Shown here piece after piece: positions 6,750 through 60,089 of a DNA stretch of 64,000 nt. Within the stretch, counting starts at the first letter, position 1. Each line of letters starts with the position of its first letter. The position numbers and the translations under genes are program-made. Location: NCBI RefSeq assembly GCF_006345805.1, contig NC_042997.1:56978001-57042000 (forward strand). The letters run 5' to 3'. Below the pieces are notes generated by a model that saw only the letters and a program-made list of their open reading frames with translations, made no database searches and was not told the DNA's origin. This stretch comes from Octopus sinensis. Lineage: Eukaryota.

Positions 6750-7860
6750 CAGGCTTGGAAGGACGGTCGTAGCAGGGAACTGCCAGAAGGGAAGCTAGGA
6801 GATAGGTTTATTTAGCCAGAGGGGAAGCAGATAAGAAAAAAATTGCCAATGTTCTGTGCCGTGAGGACCAAAGACTTGAGGTATTTCGTGTTGCAAGACA
6901 GTGTGTGAGAGAGAATAGTGATGTTGTAGGAGAGAAATGTGTCCGCATGGATGATGGTTCACTTGCACTAAATGAGGCTGCAAAGAGAGAGGTTTGGAGA
7001 CGCCACTATGAAAGGTTGCTCAATAAAGAAAATGAATGGGAGAAAGAGAGTCTGCCGAATGTCGACCCAACAGAGGGACTAGCTATCCGAGTTGACAGTA
7101 CCTTGGTAGATAAAGCAATTAAGAGTATGAAGACAGGGAAAGCCCCTGGCCCATCAGGAATCACTGCAGAGATGCTCAAAATATCTGGCAGTGTTGGCTA
7201 TAGCCTAGTCACCCGTATAATTAACCAGGTGATACACAAAGGAGTCATACCCAATGACTGGTGTAGCAGCACCATAGGCAACTGCTACAAAGATAAAGGT
7301 AACGCTTTACATACAAATAATTACTGAGGTATCAAGTTGTTGGATCAGGTAATGAAGGTCACGGAGAGGGTCATTACCCAACTAATTAGGGAGAGAGTCA
7401 GTTTAGATGAGATGCAGTTTGGGATCATGCCAGGGAAAAGCACCACTGTTGCTATATTTCTGGTAAGACTGCTGCAGGAGAAATACCTAGCCAAAGATAA
7501 ACCTCTGTACCTGGCTTTCGTTGACATGGAGAAAGCCTTTGACAGGGTCCCCCGATACCTTATATGGTGGTCAATGAGGGAACTAGGGATAGATGAATGG
7601 TTAGTGAGAGCTGTGCAAGCCATGTACAGGGACGCTGTCAGTAAGGTGAGGGTTGGCAACGAGTACAGTGAAGAATTCCGAGTAGAGGAAGGGGCCCACC
7701 AAGGTTCAGTCCTCGGCCCCTTACTATGATAAATATATCATAGTCCTCCAGGCAATAACAGGAATTCGAGACAGGATGCCCCTGGGAGCTCCTCTATGTT
7801 GACGACCTTGCTCTAATTGCTGAGTCACTATCAGAACTAGAGAAGTTTCAGGTGTGGAAA
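6750..7860 (+). mobile_element. RTE-clade LINE reverse transcriptase fragment (PLA2G15 intron)
   Basis: ORFs 6905-7327 and 7337-7729 contain KAPGPSGITAEMLK, QFGIMPGKST, AFVDMEKAFDRVP and HQGSVLGPLL; stops and frameshifts are present. Confidence 0.92.
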
Positions 7861-7865
7861 CACCT

Positions 7866-8452
7866 GAAATTATTGTATACAGTGCTCAGGTGCACCACAA
7901 CTTGTCAGAGTATATGCAGTAATGTACAAATGTCTGGAAAGTGAACAATGCATGAGTCAGATACATGCTTGTGTGTGTATGGAGGGGAGAAAATCAGGTG
8001 TAGTGTTGGCAAATCTCAGAAAGCATGAAAGTTTTGAAGGATGCAGTGCTCCGACAACTAACAACTGATGCCGGCAGTTTGTTCCATGCTTCAGCATGAA
8101 AAAATGTTTCCTGAAGTCATGGGAGCTGTGCTGTTTTCTTACTTTGTAAATATGTCCACGGGTGTTAGATGGGTGGAGTTTGAAAAGGTGCTCAGAGTTA
8201 TTGTTTGTACGATGGTTGATAATTTTATGGGTGTCTGCCAAGTCAGCTGCCAGACGTTGGAGTTTCAATGTGTCCATGCCCAGGGAAGTAAGGCGTTCGG
8301 GATATGGCAAATGCCTGATGGAGGGTATTCTTTTGGTTGCACATCGCTGAACAGCTTCCAGACGATTGATATCCTGGGCAAGATAGGGGTTCCAGACCGG
8401 TGATGCAAATTCCAGGTGAGGTCTTACCATAGCTATATCAGAGCAAGTAGAG
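7866..8452 (-). mobile_element. CR1 LINE 3' fragment abutting the RTE fragment
   Basis: ORF 7957-8466 is nearly identical to the C-terminus of ORF 27546-28793. Confidence 0.92.
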
Positions 8453-8791
8453 AATATAATGTACAAGGTTTATGTTTACACCATTGAATTATATGAACAC
8501 CTTTAAATCAATATTAAAAGTTATCGTTTACATACAATATAATTCATTTTCTACTTCAAGGTTCCTAGTAAAGCATAAAATCACACTTGTAAAGAAGTTA
8601 CAAATAGAGTGTATGCCTATAGTAGATAGCAATTGTTAAACTAATTCAGCATTAACTGAACATTTCATCTCTTTCTGGTAAAAAGTTCTATTTCAAACAT
8701 ACAGCAAAATTTTCTAAATTTGCAAAGATTTATTTCAATATAATTAAAACATTTCATTGAAATTTAAGCCAATTTTTATTGTTTCTTTTAG

Positions 8792-9592: not shown

Positions 9593-10089
9593 GTAAGAAA
9601 TAGTGGTTGTCAACATCCCTGAATTTTTTTATAGTATGTTTTAAGAAATAATTATTTAGTAATTATATTGTTTAAGAACAGAAGAAATTTTGATGAAATT
9701 ATTTTTGTTATTATCACATTTTCTCTTATAGAAGATTATCGAAGCAAATATATCTTTCATTTCACTGGGTGACTTATGATAATTGCTGCCTAACATTTCT
9801 TGAATGTTTGCTTGAAATGATCAAAACATTGCAAGGTTTGCCTATTAGCAACATTCAGCGTAGCTTAGATCTACATACAACTCTTTGGCCATGGTTGAAT
9901 AGATAACATATTTACTAATCATCATTGTCATCTCTATTGACATGGATTGAATGATACAGAACTATATTTCTCAGTGTCACTAGTAAAAGCAATGCAAAAG
10001 TTTGTACTATTATCTAAATGATGAATGTTCTTTTCTACTTTTATTAAAAAAATTTTTATTAAAATATTTTTCTTTTTATTCATATTCAG

Positions 10090-10634
10090 GAGATAATCTT
10101 GGTATTTTTATATTGAAAGATAATATTGTTCGGAAATACCAACGTACTGCAACTTCAACAGCTTGGCTTATGCCATACGATACTTTCTGGAAATCTGATG
10201 AAATTCTTGTTTCCCGTCCAGGTCGCAATTATACTGTTAAAGATTACAAACAGTTTTTTGCAGATTTGAATTTTACAATTGGCTATGAAATGCGTAAAGA
10301 CACAGAGAATCTTGTGAAAGACCTCCGTCCACCTGGAGTGGAAGTTCATTGTATACATGGAATCAATGTATCTACACCAGCTAGCTTTGTTTATGGTAAA
10401 GGATTTCCTAATGTTCAACCAACGACAATAAATGGAGATGGAGATGGGACAGTAAATTTACAAAGTTTACATGGTTGTCTTCGATGGTCAAAACAACAAA
10501 AACAGCCTGTTTACCATCATACTTTATCAGGAGCAGACCATTTGAAAATATTGAAAAATCAGACATTAATTGATCTAATTTCCCAAATAGTAACCAAAAA
10601 ATCTAAATTCTCTAAAAACAAATTGAAAAACTAA
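10090..10634 (+). CDS. PLA2G15: PLA2G15 terminal coding exon
   Basis: ttcag acceptor. Contains GDGDGTVN (catalytic Asp) and GADHL (catalytic His), stop taa at 10632-10634. The five exons total 1145 nt; with 1 nt from the missing exon this is 382 codons, so the frame is consistent. Confidence 0.95.
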
Positions 10635-20129: not shown

Positions 20130-20420
20130 TCTATATATATAAAACTGAGAATGTGTGTATGTGTGTGTGAATCACTAAAACTCAAGAATTACCCAATGGA
20201 TTTTATTCAAATTCTTCACATGCCTTACTTAGAGTCCATGCAGTGTCATGGGCCAAAAAATTTTCAACTTCTTGCCCAATGAGAGTTTGGAGCAATGTCT
20301 TATCTCTTACACTATTTCAGTATTTTGTGTCAAAAGTGAAACAATAACATTTCTATTGTAATGTGAGATAATACTTTCAGTTTTAATAGTGAAACTGTTA
20401 ATATTTTCACTATGTATATA
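20130..20420 (+). mobile_element. Possible non-autonomous Helitron 5' portion
   Basis: Starts a|tctatatatataaaactgagaatgtgtgt, a typical TC-start Helitron head; no 3' end seen. Confidence 0.4.
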
Positions 20421-20479
20421 TATATCAGTTTCATTTCTATTACTTTCACTATGATATATTTATGTATGTATATGTACGT

Positions 20480-20497
20480 ATACATATATATTACACA

Positions 20498-20556
<59 letters not shown>

Positions 20557-21365
20557 AGTATATATATAATATATAAGTATATAATATATATATATAAGTA
20601 ATATATATATATAATATAGTATATATATATATATATATAAGTATATATTATATATATATAAGTAATATATATATATATATATATAAGTATTATATATATA
20701 TATATAAGTATATATATATATAAGTATATATATATAAGTATATATATATATATATAAGTATATATATATATAAGTATATATATTATATAAGTATATATAT
20801 ATATATATATATATATATAAGTATATATATATATATAAGTATATATATAATAAGTATATATATAAGTATATATATAAGTATGTATAATATATATAAGTAT
20901 GTATATATATATATAAGTATGTATATATATATATATAAGTATGTATATATATATAATATAAGTATGTATATATATATATATAAGTATGTATATATATATA
21001 TTAAGTATATATATATATATATATATAGTATATATATATATATTATAAGTATGTATATATATAAGTATGTATATATATATATATATAAGTATGTTATATA
21101 TATATAAGTATGTATATATATATATATAATAAGTATGTATATATATATTATAAGTATGTATATATATATATATATAGTATGTATATATATATATATAAGT
21201 ATAACGATGATGATGATGATGATGATATATATATATAAGTATATATATATATATAAGTATGTATATATATATATTTATGTATGTATATTTATGTGTATAT
21301 ATATATATATGTGTGTGTGTGGATATATATATGTATATATATTTATCTTTATATATATGTATATA
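20480..21365. repeat. Long compound (TA)n microsatellite with periodic AG/GT interruptions
   Basis: Units such as tatatataag(tatg) repeated over about 0.9 kb. Confidence 0.95.
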
Positions 21366-21568
21366 TATCTGTTGCGTTGCATTCTTTCCTTCTGGGGCTG
21401 GCCGATTCAGAGCAGATCTCAGTATTAAACAGCCGAAATTTGCAATGATGAATCGGTTTCTGACTGAAGAATGAAGGCTTTGAATGACCCGTCTGTTTTT
21501 TATGTTCGTCCCTTCGTGTATTTCACGTTATTTATATTTATGTATATAAAGTTTTATTCTATATATAT

Positions 21569-21627
<59 letters not shown>

Positions 21628-23475
21628 AAGTATGTAAGGGAAATTTATTACCATGTGGCATTTTATCCCGAAGGAAAGTATCCTGACAAGGGGGGCATTA
21701 TGTTTCTGAATTTGGAATGCTTAAAACGCCATTTGTACATTCATTGCACCCTTGAAACGGCTGTAGATGATATCCTTTACTTGAATTCACCCGAATCTGT
21801 ATACTTATTCATATTTACTTTATCTACCTATTTACCCCTGAATTTTAAATTTTGAACTCACATCTGACATTTCATATAAACATCAAATTCTTAGTTGATT
21901 CAGGCAGTTCCTTTTGGAAGTCCTTACCTTGAATTTTTATCTCTTTATTTGTCACTCTTCCATTCGGTACCTGAACCCAATGTACATGGCACATAATTTT
22001 CACATATGACTTTTACATGTAATTTTGTTCACTCTTTTATAAATTTATATGTATATTTATTTCGTTATGTGTTTTAAATTATGCTTTGGAATTTGTATTG
22101 ATTGCCCAGATGTCTTCCTTCTATAATTTCCCTTATCCTTCAATTTAGCTTGCAATGACCACTTCTTAATACAGTCCATATTTTGTAAAGTATACTTAAA
22201 ACATACTTCATAAGAAAATTTAACTTTATATATATGTACGCATGTGTGTGTATGTGTATAAATATGTATATATATATATATACATACTTCAAAAAGGACA
22301 CGTGGCGTTCGACCATATAATAAAAGAAATAATATATAAATATATGCATATATACATACATATATGTACATACCTACATATATGTGTATATATACATGCA
22401 TATATGGGTACAGGACATAAAAAAAAAACGTTGAACACAATGAGAAACGAAAACATAGAAATGAACATTTTTTCGAACAACGAAAAAACAAACAGAGAAA
22501 CAAGGCATACAACATTAAAAAATATTCCCCTTCTTCAGTTGTTCCTGTTTCAACTACTCCATGTTTCGAAGGCAAGGACAAGACGCGACTCTGTTGAAAC
22601 AGTCCTTCTCGCAAAGCAAATTAAATAAAATTTGGGATTTTTTGCAGAGGGTGAAAGTGGTAACAAGAACAGGACAGTGAGAACAAAACAGTAAAAACAA
22701 ACGGTGAGGGCTGTTAAGCCAAGATGATAGAAAAATTATTATGAATGCTAGGAAGACGAGCTTATATGAGAAACGAAAATAACCTACAGGAGCTGGGGAT
22801 CATGTACATATTCATTATTAAATTGACTGAATTTGTACTTGTTAAGAAGATGTGATTGGCAAGAAGTTTCATAGGGATTAATCGTCAAAATTAATAGTTG
22901 GGAAGTAAATACTAACACTTAATGTGATGTTCAAGAAAACTTTAATTAAATCAAGCTTCTACATGCATTGAAGACAGATAAACATTGGTTCAATGCTGAA
23001 GTTTATTTGAGACAGGCAAGGGAGAAACTCCATTTACAAATCAAATAATTGACAACATCAAAGTCTCAGACATGCTGTGAGAAGTAAAAAGATCTGCAGA
23101 AACCTGAACTGATAGACTTACTGGACAGTAAAAGAAAGTGTGTACATATGAACTAGAATTTCATGAAGGAAAATTATATCCAAAAGTTAGAGACAATGAA
23201 AAGTAACAGGCAAAAAAGTGACAATAAGTAAAGTAGCATAATGAAAGCCTCCTACGAATCAAACTAGCAATAGTCCCTGCTATGGGGTGGGGATAAGAAA
23301 GGAAATGGAGGTGAGGGTAACTGTATGTCTATCAGGGAAAATAACTGAGATGGAGAAAGAATCTGACAAAGTAGACATTATGATAATTATTCAGTGATAC
23401 TATTGTTTAGCCAATCAAAAGGCATTTAGCCAATGATTTTGTTTATAGGTTTGGACCTGAAAACTGAATATTATT

Positions 23476-24360: not shown

Positions 24361-24675
24361 GACTTGTTTATTTATATATATATATTTGTGTGTGTGTGTG
24401 TGTGAGTGTGAGTGTGTGCGTGTGTTTGTGTGTGTGTTATCCATGTATGTATGATGAAAGATATGAACAAGGGAATCTGGCAAAAGCCCAGATTCTCTAG
24501 CTTAGATCTTCCATCACCTTGTCCTGCAGTTGTTGGATGAACTGCTGCGTGTGGATGCAGTCAGAATGTCCATTTTGTCCCTTCCTGCTGGCTATTGCTT
24601 TGTTGTCTTTTTGCAGCTGTCCATGTCATGTCTTGCAGCCTTTACAGTGTTTACAAACCATTGAGCAGTAGTTAT

Positions 24676-26040
24676 CATCATCATCGTTTAACGTCCGTTC
24701 TCCATGCTAGCATGGGTTGGACGGTTCGACCGGGGATCTGGGAAGCCAGAAGGCTGCACCAGGCTCCAGTCTTATCTGGCAGTGTTTCTACAGCTGGATG
24801 CCCTTCCTAACGCCAACCACTCCGTGAGTGTAGTGGGTGCTTTTTACGTGCCACCCGCACAGGTGCCTCAACAGGTCTTTGTGTCCAAGGGAGGAAAGGC
24901 ATGCATAAGTGGGCTGGGCTCACTTGTCCTGCCTGGTCTTCTCACGTACAGCATATATCCAAAGGTCTCGGTCGCTGGTCATTTCCTCAGTGAGGCCTAA
25001 AGTTCGAAGGTCGTGCTTCACCACCTCGTCCCAGGTTTTCCTGGGTCTACCTCTTCCACGGGTTCCCTCAACTGCTAGGGATTGGCACATTTTCACACAC
25101 CTATCTTCATCCATTCTCGCCACATGACCATACCAGCGCAATCGTCTTTCTTGCACACCACAACTGATGCTTCTTAGGTACAACATTTCTCTCAAGGTAC
25201 TAACGCTCTGTCGAGTATGTACACTGACATTACACATCCATCGGAGCATACAGGCTTCATTCCTCGCGAGCTTACGCATGTCCTCAGCAGTCACGGCCCA
25301 TGTAGCATGGCTGTTCGTACACATGCATCATACAGTCTGCCTTTTACTCTGAGCGAGAGGCCTTTAGTCACCAGCAGAGGTAAGAGCTCCCTAAACTTTG
25401 CCCAGGCTATTCTTATTCTACCAGTTACGCTTTCAACGCACCCACCCCCACTACTGACTTGGTCACCTAGATAACGGAAGCTATCAACTACTTCTAGTTT
25501 TCCCCCTGGAAAGTGACGGAAGTTGTTTTCTGCAGATTTTCGGAGGTTAATGCTCCCGAGCATCTGCCACATACAAAAACTATCTTCCCAGTTAGCCTAC
25601 CTTTGACATTGCTGCACCTCTTATGTGTTCATAGCTTACACTGGGTACATCTTATAGAGTTTCTACCTACACCTTTTCTACAGATCGAGCAGGGCCATCT
25701 TCCTGAAGACATTTGTGGATTGTCTACCTTCCTACTTATTAGTACTTTGGTTTTAGCTAGGTTGACTCTAAGGCCCCTCGATTCTAAACCTTCCTTCCAC
25801 ACCTGGAACTTCTCCAGTTCTGATAGTGACTCAGCAATTAGAGCAAGGTCGTCAGCATAGAGGAGCTCCCAGGGGCAACCTGTCTTGAATTCCTCCATAA
25901 TTGCCTGGAGTTATGATATCAGCATTTTGATACCCAGAACTTCTTTCCAATATTCAGATGGTACCCAGTCCTCCACGTCAACTAATTTCTTCTCAACGAC
26001 AACTTTAATCTTTAAGCTCTCCAATGCCATTGACTGTTCA
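24676..26040 (-). mobile_element. RTE-clade LINE, 5'-truncated (RT C-terminus plus complete 3' UTR)
   Basis: LLYADDLAL, DSFRYLG, RRLRWYGHVARM and RGRGRPRKTW motifs. The 3' UTR runs into the (GAT)n tail, showing that the abundant catcatcgtttaac repeat is the LINE 3' end. Confidence 0.93.
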
Positions 26041-27401: not shown

Positions 27402-28800
27402 AATGAAATTATTGTATACAGTGCTCAGGTGTACCACAACTTGTCAGAAAGTGCGTATAGAGTATATGCAGTAATGTACAAATGTCTGGAAAGCGAACAA
27501 TGTATGAGTCAGATACATGTTTGTGTGTGTATGGAGGGGAGAAAATCAGGTGTAGTGTTGGCGAATCTCAGAAAGCATGAAAGTTTTGAAGGATGCAGTG
27601 CTCCGACAACTAACAACTGATGCCAGCAGTTTGTTCCATGCTTCAGCAACTCTCAGTGTGAAAAAATGTTTCCTAAAGTCATGGGAGCTGTGCTGTTTTC
27701 TGACTTTGTAAATATGTCCACGGGTGTTAGACGGGTGGAGTATGAAAAGGTGCTCAGAGTTATTGTTTGTAAGATGGTTGATAATTTTATGTGTGTCTGC
27801 CAAGTCAGCTGCCAGACGTCGGAGTTTCAATGTATCCATGCCCAGGGAAGTAAGGCGTTCAGAATATGGCAAATGCCTGATGGAGGGTATTCTTTTGGTT
27901 GCATGTTGCTGAACGGCTTCCAGACGATTGATATCCTGGGCAAGATAGGGGTTCCAGACCGGTGATGCAAATTCCAGGTGAGGTCTTACCATAGCTATAT
28001 AAAGCCACAGATAGATAGCCGGAGAGCGGCTCACAAAGGATTTGATGAGTGATGTCAAGACACCCTCAGCCTTCTTGACAATTTTAGCGATGTGTTTTGT
28101 CCAACGCAAATCACTGTCGACAATAACACCCAGGTCACGTTTACATGAAGACTTTTTGAGATTAGTGTTGTGGAGGGAGTAGGTGGACGCTGGGGTTCTC
28201 CTCTCAAAATGCATGGTGGTACATTTGTCCACAGCCAGCTTGAGTTGCCAGTCCATGATCCACTGCTGCATTGTGTCCAGGTCTGCTTGCAATAGAGATC
28301 TATAGTGTACAGGATCTGACCTCTTTATTTCGAGGTACAGCTTGATGTCATCTGCATATTTCAGCACTGTGGCATTCTTTAAGTTGGCATCTATGTCATT
28401 AACATATGCAACAAATAAAAGGGGGCCAAGAACAGATCCCTGTGGTACACCAGATGTCATCTCATAGGGTGAAGAGTGCTGTCCTAGAACTGTGACAACC
28501 TCTTTTCGGCCGAAGATAAAAGACTTCAACCAGTTATAGAGTTCGTCTCTTACGCCCAATGCAGAGAGCTTCACCATAAGTCTTTTGTGTGACACAGAGT
28601 TAAAAGCCTTAGCAAAGTCCAGGTAAACAACATCCACCCAGGATCCGCGATCAGTGTTTTGGGTAACGTCCTCAAGAAACTCGATGAGTTGATTAGAGCA
28701 GCTGGAGTTAGGAATAAATCCAAATTGTGACGGCTGGATGAGGCTGTGAGACTTCCAGAAGTTCCAGAGGGTTTCTCTGATACAGGATTCCATCAGTTTG
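27402..28800 (-). mobile_element. CR1-clade LINE, 5'-truncated, 415-aa open RT C-terminal region
   Basis: QFGF, VVYLDFAKAFNSV, GVPQGSVLGPLLF, YADD and VRPHLEFASPVWNPY motifs. Confidence 0.95.
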
Positions 28801-31075: not shown

Positions 31076-31974
31076 CTCACCATGACTGAAACCACATATT
31101 TTTCTCTCATTAAACACATTTTATGGAATGATGATGCCAAAGTAACACACGCATGTTCCATTGGTGGAATATATATAAAAAAAAGAATTAAAATTTTTAC
31201 CCCCACCTCAATCAAGCGAAGCTGTGTGTATGTATATGAAAATACATTTTCTAACAGAAAGTATGTGTGTGTGTCAAACTTCTGTCCCCCACCCCACCAT
31301 TTTCTCCCAAATTTATTTATTAAAAAAAATTTTTTTGCCCAAAACCCGTTTTCGGATACAGAGGTTCCGGAAAATTGCCAAAAATAGGAATTGTTAAATT
31401 CCCCACTTTCCCCCAACACTAACCCTAACCATAACTACAGAAAGGTTTAAAAATTTTTGTCAGAATCGTAATGTCCGTATTTTTCCGCATATTTAGAAAA
31501 AAAAAAAAAAAATTTTTTTAATTCTACAAAAATTTTTTCAGACTCATAATCTTATTTTTCTGCATATTTTGAAAAAAAAAACAAAATATCTGAAAAAGTT
31601 AAAAAAATGAAGGAACTGGGGGTGGGGGTAATTTAAAAATGCCGATTTTGCCAATTTTTTTGCAGATTCGTATTCCCCGTAGCTGAAAAGGAGGGGGGGG
31701 TACCGAAAAAAAAAAGTAAAAAAAGGGTGATCTTTTTTTTTGAAGCGGAGGGGACAGGCGGAAGTCTTGCCTGAATTATCGCTTACATAACTCTTTTTTT
31801 TTAAATCACTAGATAAATGCCAGCAATGACCTTCTGAGGCGGCTCTCCAGTATTTTAAATTATAAACAAAAACAATTGAGGGTAGGGAGTGGGGTTGCAA
31901 AAAACCCATATTTTTCAATTTTTTTTATAGCATATAAGTGTATTTATGGAGAATAAAGTATTAATTTCTTTATT

Positions 31975-32178
31975 GCCCACAGGGGGCTAGACATAGAGGG
32001 ACAAAGGGATCAAGCCGATTACATCAACTCTAGTGCATAACTGCTACTTATTTAATCGACCCCGAAACGATGAAAGGCAAAGTCGACCTCGGCAGAATTT
32101 GAACTCAGAACGCAAAGACTGACGAACTACCGTTAAGCATTTTGCCCGGCGTGCTAACCTTTCAGCCAGCTCGCCGCC
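31975..32178 (-). mobile_element. tRNA-derived SINE (same family as 11954; other copies 44445-44635 + and 47770-47925 -)
   Basis: Reverse complement reads ggcggcgagctggctgaa...gttctgagttcaaattctgccgaggtcgactttgcc. Confidence 0.85.
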
Positions 32179-32356
32179 TTAAGTAGTAGGATATTGAGTA
32201 GGATATTGAAAAACATCAATACAGGCGAGAGTGAGAAAGAAACGAAGAGGGTTGTCTTGGATTATGTGTTAGAAACAACAGTCAAATCTCCCTTAAATCA
32301 CTTACTTTTTCCTCTGAAAATATTAACAATTAAAAAAATATTTCTACCGAAAAGGC

Positions 32357-35208
32357 GGTACTTGTCTATTGTCGTGGTCCCGGTTTCGCACACGCGAATT
32401 CGCGCGCGCGCCAGACGTAGGTACTCGATACTCGAGATCCTACGAGGTGACATGCGCAGTGCAGAATTCGCGCATGCGCGTTAACCCCCCCCCCTAAAAA
32501 AAAGGTGTTGGATTTCACTAAAAATATATATGTGTGTGTGTGTGTGTATATATAACATTTTCAATTTTACACAAAAAAATTACATAGTCGCTTTCCTCGC
32601 GGATTTACAGATAAATGAATTAATTACTATTTTACAGAATAAAATTAATGAATTAATTATATAAATTAAATAATTCTTGAAAATTAATTAATATCAATAA
32701 TATTTTTTGAACAAAGTAAATAATTTATAAAACTTGGTTAATAATTTTTTTTACACAAACGCGAACGTATATAATTTGTGAAACTTTTTTTTTTTTTACA
32801 GACGTATATAATTTGGTAAACTTAATGAATTAATTTCTTATCATCATCATCATCACGTTTAACGTCCGTTCTCCATGCCAGCATGGGTTGGACGGTTCGA
32901 CCGGGGATCTGGGAAGCCAGAAGGCTGCACCAGACTCCAGTCTTATCTGGCAATGTTTCTACAGCTGGATGCCCTTCCTAACGCCAACCACTCCGAGAGT
33001 GTAGTGGGTGCTTTTTACATGCCACCCGCACAGGTGCCAGGCGAGGCTGGCAACGGCCACGGTCGGATTGGTGCCAGTCGAGGCGGCTCTGGCATCGGCC
33101 ACGATTCGGATAGTGCTTTTTACGTACCACCAGTCCAGGGGTCCTGGCATTTGCCGGGTGTCACACTTGCCCCAACATGTCTTCGCAAGCAAAGGGGGTT
33201 GGCATGGGTGCCTGTCGTGGGATGAGGTTCGATATCAACTTCGCTTGCCTCAACAGGTCTTTGTGTATAAATGTATAAATTTTTCGCACTAAATTCTTTC
33301 CGTAGAATTTATCAAAAAACGCGCAAAATTATTCCGTAGAATTTATCAAATTAAAAAACGCAAAATTAATATATTTTTTGAAATTGCAAATTATTTAGAA
33401 TATAAAACAAATGAAGTTAAATTTTAAAAATAATGTCATATACTTATACTCTGTAAGGTGCTGTGTTCACACTTCAATTTACTATTTTCTAGAAATGTTG
33501 CTTTTCTAATTGAAACAATTTTTCTCAATCTCCATTTAAAAGTCCATCATGTCTCTTGAGACATATCAAAATGAACAACTTTGAATTACGCGGCGGCGGT
33601 GTGGTGTGAGGTTCTAATTTTTTTTCTGATCTCTCTTTGCCCCCTCTTTATCTCAGTGTTCATTCCGCTAATATTTAGAAAAATTTTCGCGCCCAATTTT
33701 TGTTGTCGCGGGAAAAGATGAACGATTTAAAATAAATATATCTTAATTGTAGTGTGAGAAAGTATATATATTCTGATGACAAAATATATTATCTTTCAAA
33801 AACATCCCAAATTTATAGACTATATCGTGTAGGTTTAAGAAATATATATATATATAGCTATATATATATATATACATATATAGTAGAGAATGAAACATCT
33901 TTCATCTGTCTCCCCACCACACCTCCATCTAGGGGGGCAAAGAGAGATCAGAAAAAAAAATTAGAACCTCACACCACCACCGCCGCCGCGGTGTTCATTT
34001 GATATGTCTCAAGAGACATGATGGACTTTTAAATGGAGATTGAGAAAAATTGTTTCAATTAGAAAAGCAACATTTCTAGAAAATAGTAATTGAAGTGTGA
34101 ACACAGCACCTTACAGAGTATAAGTATATGACATTTATTTTTTAAAATTTAACTTCATTTGTTTTATATTCTAAATAATTTGCAATTTCAAAAAATATAT
34201 TAATTTTGCGTTTTTTAATTTGATAAATTCTACGGAATAATTTTGCGCGTTTTTTGATAAATTCTACGGAAAGAATTTAGTGCGAAAAATTTATACATTT
34301 ATACACAAAGACCTGTTGAGGCAAGCGAAGTTGATATCGAACCTCATCCCACGACAGGCACCCATGCCAACCCCCTTTGCTTGCGAAGACATGTTGGGGC
34401 AAGTGTGACACCCGGCAAATGCCAGGACCCCTGGACTGGTGGTACGTAAAAAGCACTATCCGAATCGTGGCCGATGCCAGAGCCGCCTCGACTGGCACCA
34501 ATCCGACCGTGGCCGTTGCCAGCCTCGCCTGGCACCTGTGCGGGTGGCATGTAAAAAGCACCCACTACACTCTCGGAGTGGTTGGCGTTAGGAAGGGCAT
34601 CCAGCTGTAGAAACATTGCCAGATAAGACTGGAGTCTGGTGCAGCCTTCTGGCTTCCCAGATCCCCGGTCGAACCGTCCAACCCATGCTGGCATGGAGAA
34701 CGGACGTTAAACGATGATGATGATGATAAGAAATTAATTCATTAAGTTTACCAAATATATACGTCTGTAAAAAAAAAAAAGTTTCACAAATTATATACGT
34801 TCGCGTTTGTGTAAAAAAAATATTAACCAAGTTTTATAAATTATTTACTTCGTTCAAAAAATATTATTGATATTAATTAATTTTCAAGAATTATTTAATT
34901 TATATAATTAATTCATTAATTTTATTCTGTAAAATAGTAATTAATTCATTTATCTGTAAATCCGCGAGGAAAGCGACTATGTAATTTTTTTGTGTAAAAT
35001 TGAAAATGTTATATATACACACACACACACACATATATATTTTTAGTGAAATCCAACACCTTTTTTTTAGGGGGGGTTAACGCGCATGCGCGAATTCTGC
35101 ACTGCGCATGTCACCTCGTAGGATCTCGAGTATCGAGTACCTACGTCTGTCGCGCGCGCGCGCGAATTCGCGTGTGCGAAACCGGGACCACGACAATAGA
35201 CAAGTACC
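32357..35208. mobile_element. 2.85-kb fold-back non-autonomous DNA transposon, Merlin-like
   Basis: Arms of about 1.28 kb (32357-33643 and 33933-35208) are near-perfect reverse complements. Ends are GGTACTTGTC...GACAAGTACC with a perfect 8-bp TSD gaaaaggc (32349-32356, 35209-35216). Confidence 0.88.
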
Positions 35209-35529
35209 GAAAAGGCTCCTCTCATGGTTTTGAAGTGTCAAAAATATGGCCAAAATTGATCCGAAGTGGGATTAGTGGGGTTATACAAAAAGATTTCAAA
35301 TCCTTTTTTTTTTTCATACAAAGATGTGTCCACCCCCCACCATCCATCATTTCGAAGGCCGTAGTTTAAAAAAAAAATAGGAAAAACCCGTCAAAACGGA
35401 GTAGTTCCAACTTATTTGGTCTTCCTGATCCGAAACTCTTTTTCCTACGTACTCGGAAAAAATTTCCCCCCACAAATTTCTTTATAACCGTAATCTATGC
35501 CGTTTGAAAGGTATTTGTATAAAATTTCA

Positions 35530-35880
35530 TTAAAAGGTAACCATTTATATGTATACAGTGCTCAGGTGCACCACAACTGGTCAAAAGTGCGTATAAAGCA
35601 TGTGCAGCAATGTACAAATGTCTGGGAAGTGAACAGTGTATGTATATGTGCATTCTTAAATATAATAACGATAATGAAATATTGTATACAGGGCTCAGGT
35701 GCACCACAACTTGTCAAAAGTGCGTATAAAGCATGTGCAGCAATGTACAAATGTCTGGAAAGCGGACAATGCATGAGTCAGATACATGCTTGTATGTGTA
35801 TGGCGAATCTCAGGAAGCATGGAAGTTTTGAAGGATGCATTGCTCCGACAACTAACAACTGATGCCGGCAGTTTGTTCCA
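35530..35880 (-). mobile_element. Two tandem CR1 3'-end fragments
   Basis: tatacag(t/g)gctcaggtgcaccacaac occurs twice about 150 bp apart with shared variants. Confidence 0.8.
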
Positions 35881-37481: not shown

Positions 37482-38270
37482 GGATCTTTTCCTTTTGAAC
37501 GGCACTTTGTAACATAATTTCTAGGTAACTAAAAAGTTTTAAACTTCGTATACTGGTAGAACGTGTTTATAAAACATCATTTTCTCTTGGCTTTATTGAA
37601 AAAATTCTATAGGTTGTAAGATATTTCGTCTAAAATTTCTAGCATTTCGGCAATTTTAACCAATCGCTGACGTCCATTTAGGTAAACAACATTCTGTGCA
37701 TAATGAATATGTCCCTCCTTTAAGAAACAGATTGGGTTTATTTACATTTATGAAGAAAAAAGATACCCTTCCCCCACCCCTAACCCTAAATCTAAAATAG
37801 ATTGAAATGCAATAGATCGATACTAGGGTTATAATTATGGGTAACAATTTCATACGACACCGCAACGGAAAATGGGATTTTTTTCTAGCGGTGTCAAAGG
37901 AAAATGTCACCCATAATTATGGCCCTAGTATCGATCTATTGCATTTCAATCTATTTTAGATTTAGGGTTAGGGGTTGGGGAAGGGTATCTTTTTTTCTTC
38001 ACAAATGTAAATAAACCCAATCTGTTTCTTAAAGGAGGGACATATTCATTATGCACAGAATGTTGTTTACCTAAATAGACGTCAGCGATTGGTTAAAATT
38101 GCCGAAATGCTAGAAATTTTAGACAAAATATCTTACAACCTATAGAATTTTCTCAAAAAAGCCAAGAGAAAATGATGTTTTATAAACACGTTCTACCAGT
38201 ATATGAAGTTTAAAACTTTTTAGTTACCTAGAAATTATGTTACAAAGTGCCGTTCAAAAGGAAAAGATCC
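37482..38270. mobile_element. Palindromic MITE, Merlin-like (family 2)
   Basis: Ends GGATCTTTTCCTTTTGAACGGC...GCCGTTCAAAAGGAAAAGATCC, arms about 380 bp, 8-bp TSD cggtgttt/cagtgttt. Confidence 0.9.
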
Positions 38271-51989: not shown

Positions 51990-53015
51990 AGATGCATTGC
52001 CTGTTACGAACATCGGCTTACTTAGCTCGGATGAGCTCCACATCTCCAGCACTGATAGAGTCGGAGCTGATGTATGTGGGGGGAATGAGGTGTTGTTCTG
52101 CTAATATACTCGATTCCGGACATTTTTATGGATTAACAATTTCACTGAGCGTGGGTTACTTAGCTCAACGCAACGAGTTAAATTTGTCAAACGAACCCTA
52201 GTCAGAATATATGATCCTTAGGTCCTGGAGCTAAGTTTGTCCCGGTGGAGAAACGAAAAGAGATCCATTGAGATTACTTTTAGAAGCAGGTGCCTCATAT
52301 AGGACGCCGGTATAAGCGACTCTTTCGCTCGATCACACATCCTTAATGTTACAGCGGATGTGGCGGTTACTGCACCCTTAGCTAAATCAAATGAGATACT
52401 GAAGTATTTTAATTTGACTTCAGTTCCAGTCTTGCTGAATCGGTCGCAAACCCGGAGAGAAAAATTATTGGATCTTTTCCTTTTGAACGGCACATGTCAA
52501 CACATCTTTTTTCTTCGCCAATGTAAATAAACCCAATCTGTTTCTTAAACGAGGGACATATTCATACAGCACGGAATGTTGTTTACCTAAATGGAGGTCA
52601 GCGATTGGTTAAAATTGCCGAAATGCTTGAAATTAAAGTGGAAATATGTTACAACATATAGAATTTTCTCAATAAAGCCAAAAAAAAAAAATGATGTTTT
52701 TTAAATACATTCTACCAGTATACGAAGTTTAAAAGTGTTTACTTAACTAGAAATTGTGTTGACATGTGCCATTCAAAAGGAAAAGATCTAAATAATTAAA
52801 TATTATCCGCCGCTATCAATTTTATGCCGGTCGCCGTTGAGACCTCAGGTATTCTTGGACACCGCGCTGGCGATTTCATCTGCAAAATCGGGATAACTGC
52901 AGCCAGTCTTAGAGATGGGCCCAACAAGTTTGGGTGGCTGCTGCAGCGTCTGTCACTGACCATCTCTGTTGTAACACCATCACTGTCATGCTCGCTGGGC
53001 ACAGCTGAATACGCT
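51990..53015 (+). mobile_element. RLE-type (CRE/R2/R4-like) non-LTR retrotransposon C-terminal remnant
   Basis: Degenerate Zn-knuckle region (RCCSANILDSGHFYGL), DVAVTAPLA, REKLL and MPVAVETSGILGHRAGDF...LLQRLSLTIS...LGT match the restriction-like endonuclease tail. Confidence 0.7.
52470..52789. mobile_element. Internally deleted copy of Merlin-like family 2
   Basis: Same GGATCTTTTCCTTTTGAAC ends with most of the left arm missing; 8-bp TSD aaattatt/aaataatt. Confidence 0.88.
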
Positions 53016-55584: not shown

Positions 55585-56525
55585 GCGTGTATGTATATGT
55601 AGACAGGTAAAAATTTACCAACAAAGTACTACTTACCTCTTTGCTGTCAAATAAATGGATTCTCAACAAAATACACTTTTTGGTTAATGTTCACATTATT
55701 ACCCAGAAACGAAATCAGAAAAAAAAAAATAGTGCAACGGGTGTAAAACAAAAAAAGGTGTCGGAAACGAATATGAAAACAAAAATGCGCGGAAAGCAAC
55801 AGGGTGGGGAACTTTGAAAAATTCACAAGTACCGAGTTTTTCCCTCAAAACTTTTAGGAAAATGGGGTTTTTTTTATATGAAATTTTATATAAATACTTT
55901 TCAAATGGCATACATTACTATTATAATGAAATTTGTGGATAAAATCTTTTCGGAAGGGGTGGGGAGAGGACTAGGGAAAATTCACAAGATTTTGATTTTT
56001 TCCCTCGTAACTTTAAGGAAAATGAATATCTTTTAATGAAATTGTATATAAATACCTTTCAAACGACATGCATTATGGATGCCTAATCTCATGATTCCTC
56101 CCACTCCCCGGAATCAATGGAAATTTTTTTTTTTTTTTGTTGAATGAATTCCAGTGACCTTAATATGCTACAAAACCCATTTTGGGGTCCAGAAACTCAG
56201 AAACTTCACCCCAGCCCCATTTTCATATTTTTTTTTTGTTATTTCTTTCTTTTCCCATAATTTTAGATAATATCTTGCAGAAATACGTTTTCAAGAGAGT
56301 GTGGATTACATTAGATTGATAATTCAAAGAAGTTTGAAATGAATAAGTGAAAATGCAGAGGTTATAGAAGTTAGTGGTAACAAAGTGTTGAGAAATAATG
56401 AACGATAAATTCATCTAAAAAAACACATTAGAGTTTTCGTATGTATGTGTGAAACGGAGTAAAAGTATAATATTAAAACAAAATATCTTTTTCCTACCTC
56501 TTAAAATCACTGGATATAATATATT

Positions 56526-57274
56526 TAATAATCCCAGATTGCAGAATAGATTTGAAAAACTAAAGTATTTTCCCTTTGCAATTTTTGGTGCCAAAATGAG
56601 TTTCATTTTTGGGGGGAGAGAGAGAGAGAGAGATACTGGCATGGTTGGACTGTTTGACTGAGAACTGGCAAGCCAGGAGGCTGCAATCAGGCTCCAGCCT
56701 GTTCTGGCAAGGTTTCTACAGCTGGATGCTCTTCCTAATACCAACCACTCCAAGAGTGTAGTGGGTGCTTTTCAAGTTCCACTGGTACAGGGGCCAATCA
56801 GATGGCACTAGCATCAATCACGCTCAAATGGTACTTTTTACGTGCCACCAGCACTGGCACAGCTGATGCCAATACCAGCAGCACATAAAAAGTACCATTC
56901 GAACATGATTGATGCCAGTGTCATGTGACTGGCCCCTGTACCAGTGGAACTTGAAAAGCACCCACTACACTCTTGGAGTGGTTGGTATTAGGAAGGGCTG
57001 TAGAAACCTTGCCAGAACAGACTGGAGCCTGATTTCAGCCTCCTAGCTTGCTAGTCCTCAGTCAAACAGTCCAACCCATGCCAGCATGGAAAGCAGACGT
57101 TAAACGATGATTGTTACACCATTCAAAGTTTAGGTAAACTTTGTCACTCACTCACATTCTCTTTCTCTCACTCTCTCCCACCCTGTCACAAAAATGAAAC
57201 TCATTTCAGCACCAAAAATTGCAAAGGGAAAATGCTTTAATTTTTCAAATCTATTCTGCAATCTGGGATTATTA
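56526..57274. repeat. 750-bp imperfect palindrome folded through an RTE 3' UTR copy
   Basis: Outer arms 56526-56615 and 57185-57274. Inner LINE halves are mirrored about cagctg at 56860-56865. Confidence 0.9.
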
Positions 57275-57280
57275 TATATA

Positions 57281-57802
57281 CTAGCAAACCTACCCATCTA
57301 TGATGGGAAATGAAAGGAGGGTGGAAAATAACAACTTTAAGTATGAATGTATTTATACTGAAATATGGCATGGGAAATGTTGCAAAATATAAATAATGGT
57401 TGGTTTTTATTATATTTATGTGCAGCTCTACACAGTACATATTCATGATATTATTACATTTACAAAACTTCTTTGTAAATGATATTTTGTGTTTGATCCG
57501 CACTAATTTTCAAATGCTCAGCTCATAATGACATGTGTAAACATTGGAGTGGGCAGAAACACACAAACACAATCTAAAGTCTGGTCCTGAGACTTGTTGG
57601 CTGTGAATGAGAAGGCTAGTTTGATGGGAAACTGCCTGCATTATAATTGGAAGGGAAACTGGTTGTCGCAAGATACCAGTGGTATCTGAGGTGTGAATAA
57701 GCGTTTACCACTGTGAGAGCCAATCGCTATCACTGCCTCGATGACGTGAGAATTGAGTTGCGTGATAATGTATCTTGTTCCATTGCAATGTCCTTTGGCA
57801 GG
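57281..57802 (-). mobile_element. Helitron 3' fragment (PIF1-like helicase C-terminus plus 3' terminus)
   Basis: GHCNGTRYII, IPLV, FPFQL*CRQFPIKLAFSFTANKSQDQTL and NIIYKEVL*. Then hairpin cccatc-ata-gatggg (57293-57307) and terminal CTAG followed by T. Confidence 0.88.
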
Positions 57803-60089
57803 GTCAAAATTTTACCCATTCCCAACATTTTACAGAAATACATTTTCCAGAGTGTGAATTACATGGTTCGTTATTAAATATATAGAGAATGTGACATTTA
57901 TATTGTGTATATTTTACACTGAACATATCTTCTGAAGTCATAGTGTATATAAATGTGCGTGTGTATATATATATACAACATGTGAGGTATTGGTATCTAT
58001 AAAACCCAAAGAGTGACAGGTAAGTAGTAAGCGCTATGGACAGACCGGAGTTAAACTCTTGGTTTGATAGTGATATGTGTGAGGTGTCTAATGTGGGTAG
58101 CATGTATATATATATATTAGACAAAATGAGATAAAAAAAAGCCAAGGCTTTGTTATCTCATTTTGTCTAATATATATAATAGCATGTATGTGTATGTAGA
58201 CAGGTAAAAATTCACCGACAAAGTACTACTTACCTCTTTGCTGTCAAATAAACGGATTAATTCTCAACAAAATACACTTTTTTTCTCAACAAAATTTTAC
58301 AACTTTATACCAGCATTTTAGGAAGAAAAAAACAAAAATATTTCGCACCCAAACTAATTTTTGTGTGTTGGGGAAGAGCAAAAATAAAAGTTGTCTCTCT
58401 ACAAAGAAGCAGTTTAAAATAAATATATCTTAATTGTTTTGTGAGAAAGTATATATATTCTGATGATAAAATATAGTATCTTTTAAAACATCCTAAATTT
58501 TCGACTATATCTTGTGTGTTTAAGAAAAAAAAAACGTTTTTTCTCTTATACTACTGTGTGTGTGTGTGAGAGAGAGAGTGAGAAAGCGGCATTTGCTGAG
58601 CTGTCTCTAAGTATAACGATGTCCTGTTCCACCTGAACTTGTGCAATGTTACACCTCTGAATTTCTTTTTGATTGTGATAATTAATCAAGGGGTTTAGTC
58701 GTTACTGCCAAAATTAATTTCTCTTACATTTTCTCTTTCAATATCTAATTAAAAGAGAGAATATATTGTTACCAACAATGTTGAAACTTTAGTAACTTGA
58801 TTGCTCTGTTATTGAACCAGGATTTTAATTTCATTTGGTACACACCTTGCTATCATTTATATGGAGAATTGCAATCGTGGCATATAAATAAAACTTATTT
58901 TAATAGAAATTTTATGAGTACATCCGTAAGTGGTTTTCTTGCACACCAACACCTCCCCACCCACATATATGCACACAGATACACATGGATGAAGTCCCAT
59001 TTTGGAAGTATGTTAAAGTTTTTATTATTTTGGAATGAAGAACACAAACATAGGTGCTGAGCCAGTGACTAAACTTGTAGTATTTTGTTGAGATTAATCC
59101 AATGAATTGACAACAAGATAATTGCTTCTATCAGAATCATTTACCTTTAAAGTGAAAAAGCAAAACAACAGGTATGTAAAATATATTTTGTGTACTTCTT
59201 TCTCTGTTTATATGGATAAGCTGTAGAAGTTGTGCATGTGCGCACACACAAGCACAAAAATTCTCCAGACATTTAGCTGTTATTTTTAGCATATCAAGTT
59301 TTGTGGTGAGGGCTTTACCATGCCATGGTCCTTTTACTTTTAGACAGCAGGATGGGGTGTGGATCAGTTTTGGAATTTTTCATTAAAAATTTGAAATTAA
59401 ATTTTTTTTCACATATTTTTAATCTCTATTTTCCCACATAGATTGGAAAAAAACCCTCAAAAAATTAAAAATTGGTGGGTGGGGGTGGCGAGTAGAATTA
59501 AAAATTTGTAAAACATGGTTTTTTGCATATTCGGAATCTCCGTCATTGAAGACATAGGAATCCGGTGAAAAAAAAAATTCTGAAAGGTCAGTTTAGAAGG
59601 GGTGGGGGGACTGTGCTCCAGGTCAGCCAAAAGGTATGACCATTTTTCTGAATAATAAATAAATTTCAACATAATTATCCTTGGCATTTTCAAGAATGTA
59701 TCAACAAAATTTCATTTAAAAATATACATTAAGAAAATATTTATGAGGAAACAGTCAGTGGGACATCCAACTATAGTTTAACTCCCATTTGTCATCTCAC
59801 GTCAAGTTTATATTTAATTAATACCAGCTTACAATGCCCAGCGAATATGGTGGGTGAGGCATCATTTCCCATTCAAACTGCTCCAACCTTTCAAATGTCA
59901 TCCTAGCTGTATGTGGCTGAACTTTATCCTGATAGAATACCTTTTGTCTTGAAACCAAAGATGGTCATTTTTCTTCTAGCACTGACTGAAGCTGCTTGAA
60001 CTGCTCACAGTAGGCCTCCTTTGTTATCGTTTGGCTTGGGTTTAAAAGTTCAAAGTGGACTAAACCTTTCATATCCTACAAAACAAATA

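What the first reader, a model, noticed from the sequence alone, without database searches (positions are those of the whole stretch)
32357..35208. 2.85-kb Merlin-like fold-back transposon with the same LINE insertion mirrored in both arms
Seen: arms of about 1.28 kb are near-perfect reverse complements around a 290-bp spacer, with GG termini and a perfect 8-bp TSD (gaaaaggc). An RTE 3'-UTR insertion (about 32836-33270 and 34300-34728) sits at the identical position in both arms, and the ORF track gives identical peptides in three frames. Known: independent LINE insertions do not hit mirror-image sites with the same truncation. Inference: one arm was copied from the other after the insertion (hairpin-templated repair or conversion). 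TIRs would then be actively homogenised, letting passenger DNA propagate into both ends and build giant dsRNA/cruciform elements.
Basis: partly seen in the sequence, partly recalled or inferred. Interest (0 to 1): 0.8.

Follow-up and report, generated by a model that had tools for sequence, protein, structure and literature searches.

The report
Young fold-back transposon carrying mirrored LINE tail
This is a real, very recently formed 2.85-kb non-coding "fold-back" DNA transposon in an octopus-like genome: one end, which already carried a fragment of an RTE retrotransposon, was copied in mirror image onto the other end, a known way for such elements to grow rather than a new mechanism.

Summary
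Window 32357-35208 is a 2,852-bp element with GG...CC termini and a perfect 8-bp target-site duplication (GAAAAGGC). Its arms are 1,288 and 1,276 nt, differ by 1 substitution and 14 small indels, and flank a 288-bp asymmetric spacer. Each arm holds the same 5'-truncated RTE 3'UTR (32840-33266 antisense, 34303-34727 sense). A paralogous LINE at 24.7 kb shows this sequence directly downstream of an RT-bearing ORF.

One arm must have been copied from the other after the LINE inserted. The extra claim of active TIR homogenisation is not supported. Two older palindromes in the same window have arms that diverged 4.6% and 7.7%. One of them (37482-38270, GG termini, 8-bp TSD) belongs to a family with short-TIR copies in this window (52470-52789) and in Octopus vulgaris. 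Fold-back forms are therefore derived, recurrent, one-off products that then decay.

The Merlin assignment fits (GG ends, 8-bp TSD, Merlin abundant in octopus) but is unproven: no transposase and no other copy could be reached.

This matches the TIR extension described for Galileo. Verdict: a new member of a known kind, of modest interest.

The parts
32349..32356 (.). Left copy of the 8-bp target-site duplication GAAAAGGC
32357..33644 (+). Left arm (1,288 nt), starting GGTACTTGTCTATTGTCGTGGTCCCGG
   Evidence: reverse complement of the right arm, with 1 substitution and 14 indel events
32357..32497 (+). GC/CpG-rich terminal and subterminal region with short palindromic motifs (CGCGAATTCGCG, GCGCATGCGC). 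Inferred transposase-recognition end. Mirrored at about 35065-35208.
   Evidence: family D2; function inferred
32840..33266 (-). 5'-truncated RTE-type LINE 3'UTR, from UTR nt 36 to the (GAT)n tail, including a ~105-bp VNTR region. Left-arm copy.
32856..33424 (.). 569-nt block that is 100% identical between the arms (pairs with 34139-34713). It covers the LINE piece plus 158 bp of inner flank. All 15 inter-arm differences lie outside it.
   Evidence: (I1)
33645..33932 (.). Asymmetric 288-bp spacer (loop). About 33676-33912, including a microsatellite, is homologous to window 58336-58607.
33933..35208 (-). Right arm (1,276 nt), ending ...GACAAGTACC
34303..34727 (+). The same RTE 3'UTR fragment, right-arm copy (sense)
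35209..35216 (.). Right copy of the 8-bp target-site duplication GAAAAGGC
24674..25324 (-). Context: paralogous RTE-type LINE. C-terminal ORF 24920-25324, then 3'UTR 24919-24674 ending in (GAT)n. It is 97% identical to the insert over 194 nt. The frameshifted RT part continues upstream to about 26 kb.
37482..38270 (.). Context: second fold-back element (789 bp). GG...CC termini, TSD CGGTGTTT/CAGTGTTT (7/8), arms 391/392 nt with 4.6% substitution divergence, 6-nt loop.
52470..52789 (.). Context: short-TIR (34 nt) 320-bp copy of the same family as 37482-38270. TSD AAATTATT/AAATAATT (7/8).
56517..57283 (.). Context: third palindrome. Two RTE tails lie head-to-head at the centre (7-nt spacer), and the arms extend into non-LINE flank. 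7.7% substitution divergence, no clear TSD.

Best explanation
The feature is a genuine, very young, non-autonomous fold-back (long-TIR) cut-and-paste DNA transposon in an octopod-like genome. Its ends (5'-GG, 8-bp TSD) fit the Merlin superfamily.

Most likely order of events:
1. A conventional non-coding element received a 5'-truncated RTE LINE 3'UTR by ordinary target-primed reverse transcription.
2. In a single intramolecular repair or template-switch event, primed from the short homology between the two inverted termini, about 1.29 kb of one end was copied in inverted orientation onto the other end. The copied stretch was terminus, internal DNA, LINE piece and more internal DNA. It replaced what had been at the other end and left 288 bp of asymmetric centre.
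3. The element sits in (or moved into) this site flanked by the 8-bp duplication made by a transposase supplied in trans.

The mirrored LINE is a passive passenger of step 2. The element encodes nothing. If transcribed, it could form a ~1.28-kb hairpin or cruciform.

Shown: the anatomy, the TSD, the LINE identity, the copying after insertion, and the recurrence of such fold-back derivatives here. Inferred: the repair mechanism, the order of step 3 relative to step 2, and the superfamily.
For: - Anatomy and TSD. The arms differ by 1 substitution in 1,268 aligned bases (0.08%).
- Not an artefact pattern: the flanks are unrelated to each other, and the inverted repeat stops exactly at the TSD.
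- LINE identity: the insert equals the UTR that follows the ORF of the LINE at 24.7 kb. Seven other copies in the window end at the same 3' terminus (GGACGTTAAACGATGAT...) with variable 5' ends, as expected for retrotransposed copies. The ORF has 80% identity to an Octopus vulgaris protein. An RVT_1 fragment lies upstream.
- Recurrent, derived fold-backs: the family at 37482-38270 (GG ends, 8-bp TSD) has a fold-back form here. It also has short-TIR forms at 52470-52789 and in O. vulgaris L001:469-887 (TSD 7/8), collinear with one arm.
- Arms decay after formation: 4.6% and 7.7% substitution divergence in the two older palindromes.
- Published precedent: TIR1 plus internal sequence copied into the place of TIR2 in Galileo (PMC3573991).
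- Merlin definition: GG termini, 8-9 bp TSD (PMC8101967).
- Merlin in octopus: abundant or recently active.
Against: - No second copy of this family was found in the window, in metagenome contigs or at protein level. The ancestral short-TIR form and the LINE-free state are therefore not observed for this family.
- No transposase was found, so the superfamily is unproven. The arms (1.29 kb) far exceed the 24-462 bp reported for Merlin TIRs.
- All 15 inter-arm differences lie outside a 569-nt perfectly identical block that contains the LINE piece, although that block has as many homopolymer runs of 5 or more as the outer region. My estimates are P about 0.003 when weighted by run content, and about 0.04 for the AT-rich 158 bp alone. 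This could mark a separate, later conversion tract rather than one event.
- The 14:1 indel-to-substitution ratio is unlike the older palindrome (1:18). It may be assembly or polishing noise, so the true arm divergence is uncertain.
Confidence: 0.62

Rival explanations
1. Two-step origin with inter-arm gene conversion. A fold-back element with arms of about 860 bp already existed. The RTE fragment inserted into one arm. A double-strand break in the other arm was then repaired from the first, copying the 427-bp insert across. Arms would be kept alike by repeated conversion.
For: - The 569-nt block 32856-33424, containing the LINE piece, is perfectly identical, while all 15 differences lie in the 719 nt outside it.
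- Long inverted repeats are known substrates for intramolecular conversion (discussion in PMC3573991).
Against: - Outside the block there is still only 1 substitution in 719 nt, so the arms as a whole are equally young. One event is more economical.
- The differences are almost all slippage-type indels, which may be technical.
- The older palindromes in the same window have diverged by 4.6% and 7.7%, so sustained homogenisation is not a general property here.
- In the 37.5-kb family, the fold-back differs from short-TIR relatives by a whole-arm duplication, not by conversion of pre-existing arms.
Confidence: 0.22
2. The structure is the same, but the element belongs to another superfamily with TSDs of about 8 bp (a Mutator-like element, hAT or P) rather than Merlin.
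For: - TSD length alone is shared by several superfamilies (general knowledge).
- Long-TIR or fold-back forms are documented for P (Galileo) and Mutator (Tm1).
- O. vulgaris has 21 recently active Mutator families and 49 unclassified TIR families.
- The arms exceed the reported Merlin TIR range.
Against: - 5'-GG termini with an 8-bp TSD are the published Merlin signature.
- The termini do not fit the usual hAT (YARNG) or P (CATG...) starts (my knowledge).
- Merlin transposase-like sequences are unusually numerous in Octopus bimaculoides.
Confidence: 0.3
3. Fold-back assembly artefact: a chimeric palindromic long read, or mis-joined haplotypes.
For: The differences between the arms are dominated by homopolymer-type indels typical of long-read consensus errors. 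No independent reads were available.
Against: - The palindrome stops exactly at GG...CC termini inside a perfect 8-bp direct repeat, and the two flanks are unrelated. A chimeric read would mirror the flank too.
- A unique 288-bp centre with its own paralog elsewhere separates the arms.
- Older, diverged palindromes of the same build exist in the window and in O. vulgaris.
Confidence: 0.03
4. An inverted segmental duplication unrelated to transposition, like the palindrome at 56.5 kb, that happens to include an RTE tail.
For: - Palindromes are frequent here: three in 64 kb.
- RTE tails are dense, with 8 further pieces in the window.
- The 56.5-kb palindrome has no TSD.
Against: A perfect 8-bp TSD lies exactly at the ends of the inverted repeat, with GG...CC termini. 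Inverted duplication does not create flanking direct repeats.
Confidence: 0.04

Closest known systems
Galileo (P superfamily, Drosophila), '2-TIR' non-autonomous copies with extended TIRs
   Same: - Non-coding elements made almost entirely of two long inverted arms (up to about 1.25 kb).
- TIR length varies among copies.
- Extension by copying one end plus adjacent internal sequence into the place of the other end (TIR1-F1-F1-TIR2).
- The longest-TIR copies are always non-autonomous (PMC3573991).
   Different: - Different superfamily signature: 7-bp TSD and a P/THAP transposase.
- Galileo arms contain internal tandem repeats, not a LINE passenger.
- Here only one copy of the family is available.
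Merlin superfamily (IS1016/IS1595-related) non-autonomous elements
   Same: 5'-GG termini and an 8-bp TSD. Merlin is abundant or recently active in octopus genomes.
   Different: Reported Merlin TIRs are 24-462 bp, whereas these arms are 1,288 nt. No DDE_Tnp_IS1595 ORF or autonomous partner was found, so membership is unproven.
Classical Foldback (FB) elements of Drosophila and other fold-back transposons (Tetris, Tm1)
   Same: Long inverted arms make up most of the element. They have little or no coding capacity and can fold into a hairpin.
   Different: FB arms are built of degenerate tandem repeats. Here the arms are unique sequence plus a retrotransposon fragment.
Mu killer (maize), an inverted duplication of a transposon that yields a hairpin RNA
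   Same: An inverted duplication of transposon sequence that would give a long hairpin RNA if read through (PMC3440606). Here the hairpin would include 427 nt of an RTE 3'UTR in both orientations.
   Different: Mu killer's silencing activity is demonstrated. Here there is no expression or small-RNA evidence, so the resemblance is purely structural.

Membership tests
Merlin superfamily DNA transposon | Terminal 5'-GG-3' at both ends | tested here: met
   GGTAC...GTACC. Definition from PMC8101967.
Merlin superfamily DNA transposon | 8- or 9-bp target-site duplication | tested here: met
   GAAAAGGC on both sides, 8/8.
Merlin superfamily DNA transposon | TIR length within the reported range (24-462 bp) | tested here: not met
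   The arms are 1,288 and 1,276 nt. TIR length is not considered a reliable classifier (PMC3573991), so this weakens the assignment but does not exclude it.
Merlin superfamily DNA transposon | DDE_Tnp_IS1595 transposase in the element, or in an autonomous relative with the same termini | not testable with these tools
   - The four ORFs overlapping the element that were scanned (116, 96, 82 aa) have no Pfam hit.
- None of the ORFs of 110 aa or more in the window resembled a transposase on inspection, and only 11 ORFs/segments were scanned.
- The host genome cannot be searched by DNA here.
Fold-back / long-TIR non-autonomous transposon | Two long inverted arms forming most of the element, bounded by a TSD | tested here: met
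   Arms make up 90% of the 2,852 bp, with a perfect TSD.
Fold-back / long-TIR non-autonomous transposon | Multiple dispersed copies, each with its own TSD (evidence of mobility as a family) | tested here: inconclusive
   No other copy was found in the 64-kb window, in metagenome contigs or in protein collections. The genome itself is not searchable. A different GG/8-bp family in the window does meet this feature.
RTE-clade LINE (identity of the mirrored insert) | The sequence is contiguous with the 3' end of an RT-encoding LINE ORF | tested here: met
   The paralog at 24674-25324(-) has the stop codon, 35 nt, then the sequence shared with the insert through to the tail. Upstream lie a YADD motif and an RVT_1 fragment at E=2e-4, below the Pfam cutoff.
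RTE-clade LINE (identity of the mirrored insert) | 3' end made of a short tandem repeat instead of poly(A), shared by 5'-truncated copies | tested here: met
   A (GAT)4-5 tail in all copies, with a common 3' terminus and variable 5' ends. Microsatellite tails are typical of RTE (PMC9115989).
RTE-clade LINE (identity of the mirrored insert) | Phylogenetic placement of the RT within the RTE clade | not tested
   Support is indirect only: the C-terminal ORF has 80% identity to an O. vulgaris protein, and it carries the RLRWYGHV...GRPRKTW motif that I recognise from RTE elements (my knowledge). No reference set was available for a tree.

The most novel reading that the evidence does not exclude
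Octopus GG/8-bp-TSD (Merlin-type) elements may habitually turn into fold-backs by end-copying, mirroring whatever has landed in them. This copy would then place 427 nt of the 3'UTR of an RTE lineage (RTE LINEs are reported as expressed in octopus brain) into a perfect ~1.28-kb hairpin. If transcribed, it could act as a natural hairpin-RNA locus, giving Mu killer-like siRNA/piRNA production against RTE or serving as a strong ADAR substrate. A parasite-versus-parasite accident would then have become host defence or an RNA-editing sink.
Probability: 0.06. Interest if true: 0.65.

Novelty: new member of a known kind. Interest (0 to 1): 0.3.

Why it matters
This is a clean, datable example of how long-TIR or fold-back transposons arise, and of how unrelated passenger DNA (here a retrotransposon tail) ends up mirrored in both ends. 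The window itself supplies the comparison: a family with both short-TIR and fold-back forms shared with O. vulgaris, and older palindromes whose arms have decayed.

Practical consequences:
- Such elements can be mistaken for assembly artefacts.
- They can confuse repeat annotation. The LINE piece gets counted twice, and spurious 116-aa ORFs appear in mirror image.
- They are potential hotspots for hairpin or cruciform instability and for dsRNA formation.

No new mechanism is required.

Tried and rejected
- Other copies of the family. BLAST of the non-LINE arm segments and the spacer against the rest of the window found only microsatellite noise and one paralog of the spacer. Exact scans of JGI metagenome contigs with 21- and 22-nt terminal and subterminal words gave 0 hits. 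A word-indexed protein search with a 50-aa ORF internal to the TIR found nothing. The exhaustive HMMER search with the right-arm ORF gave one hit, which pairwise BLAST showed to be summed weak matches (22% identity) to a repetitive 2,105-aa protein. Four exact-ORF look-ups gave nothing on record.
- Empty site. The joined flanks (1.5 kb each side) have no paralog crossing the junction in the window.
- SINE or structured RNA in the insert. There are no tRNA genes and no Rfam family at gathering threshold in the whole window.
- Composite of two complete elements. Rejected. The inner ends of the arms are not inverted copies of the outer termini, and the arms have no TSDs of their own.
- Residual palindromy in the spacer, or microhomology at the arm/spacer junction. 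None above shuffled controls.
- Relationship between this element's termini and those of the 37.5-kb family. Only the GG and scattered matches are shared, P=0.07.
- TSD of the LINE insertion inside the arm. I saw only a weak AT-rich resemblance by eye (about 12 of 15 positions), which is not convincing.
- A literature search for a 15-nt stretch of the LINE tail gave no paper.
Full report
**Observation.**
- The left arm (32357-33644, 1,288 nt) aligned globally with the reverse complement of the right arm (33933-35208, 1,276 nt) gives 1,267 matches, one substitution (32713) and 14 indel events in 28 gap columns. Most indels are in homopolymer or short-repeat context; one is a 9-bp indel at 33580-33588.
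- The arms enclose a 288-bp spacer (33645-33932) that has no palindromic remnant apart from a (TA)n tract.
- The element begins GGTAC and ends GTACC. The eight bases on each side are both GAAAAGGC. For this base composition, an 8/8 match at fixed positions has a probability of about 3e-5.
- Beyond the duplication, the two flanks show no inverted similarity.
- Identical ORFs (116, 94, 77 aa and shorter) appear in both arms, as reported. None has a Pfam match.

**Identity of the mirrored insert.**
- The GC-rich block in each arm (32840-33266 antisense, 34303-34727 sense) has seven further relatives in the window. All share the same 3' terminus (...GGACGTTAAACGATGATGAT) and differ at the 5' end, which is the signature of 3'-anchored, 5'-truncated retrotransposed copies.
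- The relative at 24674-24884 lies directly downstream of an ORF on the minus strand (24920-25324). After the stop codon come 35 nt, then ACACAAAGACCTGTTGAGGCA, which is exactly where the insert in the arms begins, and then the shared sequence down to the (GAT)n tail. Identity is 97% over 194 nt. The arm copy carries about 207 nt more of a ~105-bp repeated region, which also varies in other copies.
- Upstream of that ORF, frameshifted reading frames contain a YADD reverse-transcriptase motif, an RVT_1 fragment (E=2e-4) and a PHD-like finger.
- The ORF has 80% identity to an Octopus vulgaris protein. An O. vulgaris locus carries the same tail at up to 93.8% identity.
- A microsatellite 3' end is typical of RTE elements, which are known in octopus (PMC9115989; PMC13282606).
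- I accept 'RTE-type LINE 3'UTR'. I did not place the RT in the RTE clade by phylogeny.
- The host is an octopod or close relative. This is inferred from these matches and from a PLA2G15/LCAT-like exon at 10002-10634.

**What must have happened.** The two inserts sit at mirror positions with the same truncation and no differences apart from a 2-bp indel in the microsatellite tail. Independent insertion is excluded for practical purposes, so one arm was copied from the other after the LINE fragment had inserted. The open question is whether this reflects one event or ongoing homogenisation.

**Evidence from the rest of the window.** A scan of the whole window for inverted repeats found two more palindromes.
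- *The element at 37482-38270.* It is 789 bp long, with GG...CC termini, a 7/8 8-bp TSD (CGGTGTTT/CAGTGTTT), arms of 391 and 392 nt and a 6-nt loop. Its arms differ by 18 substitutions and one indel, or 4.6%.
- *Short-TIR relatives of that element.* The same family has a conventional copy at 52470-52789 (320 bp, 34-nt TIRs, TSD AAATTATT/AAATAATT). Another lies in O. vulgaris (L001:469-887, 419 bp, ~29-nt TIRs, TSD AAAAATTG/AAAAATAG). The O. vulgaris copy is collinear with one arm of the fold-back from its centre outward. In that family the short-TIR form is therefore ancestral. The fold-back is a derivative in which almost the whole element was duplicated in inverted orientation in place of one TIR.
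- *The palindrome at 56517-57283.* It has two RTE tails head-to-head at its centre, arms reaching into non-LINE flank, 7.7% substitution divergence and no clear TSD.

Three conclusions follow:
- Fold-back derivatives of GG/8-bp-TSD elements recur in this genome.
- They arise by whole-end copying.
- Their arms then diverge with time, which argues against sustained homogenisation.

By the same measure the element under study, at 0.08% substitution divergence, is simply very young.

**Mechanism.** The best-supported account is a single intramolecular copying event. A break near one end is repaired using the other, inverted end as template. Synthesis starts in the short terminal homology and runs inward for about 1.29 kb before rejoining, which leaves the asymmetric 288-bp centre. 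[quoted passage not shown] The repair pathway itself is inferred, not shown.

**An observation that keeps the two-step model alive.** All 15 inter-arm differences lie outside a 569-nt perfectly identical block (32856-33424) that holds the LINE piece plus 158 bp of AT-rich inner flank. That block has as many homopolymer runs of five or more as the outer arm region.
- Weighted by run content, I estimate the chance of no events in the block at about 0.003. For the AT-rich 158 bp alone it is about 0.04.
- Against that reading, outside the block there is still only one substitution in 719 nt.
- The 14:1 indel-to-substitution ratio is the reverse of the older palindrome (1:18). This suggests that many of these indels are consensus errors or palindrome-specific slippage.
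- I rate the two-step conversion model at about 0.2.

**Superfamily.**
- GG termini with an 8-bp TSD match the published definition of Merlin (PMC8101967).
- Merlin transposase-like sequences are unusually numerous in Octopus bimaculoides. Two Merlin families are recently active in O. vulgaris.
- Against membership, the arms are far longer than the 24-462 bp reported for Merlin TIRs, the element encodes nothing, and no autonomous partner could be sought.
- The termini of this element and of the 37.5-kb family share little beyond GG (P=0.07).
- 'Merlin-compatible' is the right wording. A Mutator-like or other 8-bp-TSD superfamily remains possible.

**Artefact and other rivals.**
- *Chimeric fold-back read.* This would mirror the flank and would not stop at GG...CC termini inside a perfect direct repeat. 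It would not contain a unique 288-bp centre whose core (33676-33912) has its own paralog at 58336-58607.
- *Precedent for real palindromes.* Older, diverged palindromes exist in the same assembly and in O. vulgaris. I put the artefact at about 0.03, while noting that polishing may have distorted the arm differences.
- *Composite of two complete elements.* Rejected, because the arms lack inner termini and TSDs of their own.

**What could not be done.**
- No other copy of this family was found in the window, in metagenome contigs, or through protein-level searches and exact-ORF look-ups.
- The source genome cannot be searched by DNA with these tools.

**Verdict.** This is a real, young, non-autonomous fold-back DNA transposon with a passenger RTE 3'UTR mirrored by end-copying. 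It is a new member of a known kind. Its value is as a clean illustration, with in-window and cross-species comparators, of how long-TIR elements form and then decay. The most novel reading not excluded is that the hairpin acts as a dsRNA source against an RTE lineage, or as an ADAR substrate. There is no evidence for this here.

Noticed in passing
window 37482-38270, 52470-52789; L001 469-887: A second GG...CC / 8-bp-TSD non-autonomous family. It is present as a 789-bp fold-back (arms 4.6% diverged, 6-nt loop) and as short-TIR copies of 320 bp (this window) and 419 bp (Octopus vulgaris OX597824.1). The centre of the fold-back keeps 'TGGGAT' where the short-TIR copies have the left terminus GGATC..., possibly a remnant of the replaced TIR.
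   Followed up: yes
window 56517-57283: Palindrome whose centre (7-nt spacer) is the junction of two RTE 3' tails truncated at the same point and facing head-to-head. The arms continue about 120-170 bp into non-LINE DNA, are 7.7% diverged and have no clear TSD. It could be a snap-back or hairpin product of LINE integration, or a plain inverted duplication. Unexplained.
   Followed up: partly
window 33676-33912 and 58336-58607: The core of the spacer is 85-90% similar to a second locus in the window, and both have a microsatellite at the same internal position. It is either an unrecognised small repeat family or the original internal region of the transposon family.
   Followed up: partly
window 32856-33424: A perfectly identical 569-nt block between the arms, while all 15 differences lie in the other 719 nt. 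The indel-to-substitution ratio is 14:1, against 1:18 in the older palindrome. This may be a conversion tract or assembly/polishing noise.
   Followed up: partly
window 10002-10634 (+): ORF matching the C-terminal part of the LCAT / phospholipase A2 group XV family (Pfam PF02450, E=8e-23). Probably the last exon of a host gene. The best public relative is 90% identical (Logan assembly), and the next are about 55-58% (annelid and others).
   Followed up: partly
window 27546-28793 (-), 6905-7729 (+), 7957-8466 (-): Other non-LTR retrotransposon fragments with RVT_1 domains (E=6e-31 and 3e-12). The 27.5-kb and 8-kb copies share a C-terminal region (...MVRPHLEFASPVWNPY...), so they belong to one LINE family distinct from the RTE.
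   Followed up: no
window 1951-2355: An RTE tail copy with extra units of the ~53/105-bp internal repeat (ORF shows repeated ...GAFYVPPA...). The LINE 3'UTR therefore carries a variable-number tandem repeat.
   Followed up: partly
window about 20400-21650: About 1.2 kb of degenerate (TA)n-rich low-complexity sequence (GC 0.22) that produces many spurious inverted-repeat hits.
   Followed up: no
window 31964-32180; L001 16585-17869: The sequence just upstream of the element matches, at 76-86% identity, a ~184-bp tandem repeat array in the O. vulgaris locus. It appears to be a satellite-like repeat shared between the genomes.
   Followed up: no
window 35550-35775: Two 93-nt direct repeats (92% identical, 133 nt apart) just downstream of the element, lying inside a 121-aa cysteine-rich ORF (35497-35862). 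Not examined further.
   Followed up: no
L001 14009-14338: Another small palindrome (~330 bp, arm segments 87-94% complementary) in the 20-kb O. vulgaris sample. This suggests that fold-back structures are common in octopus genomes.
   Followed up: no
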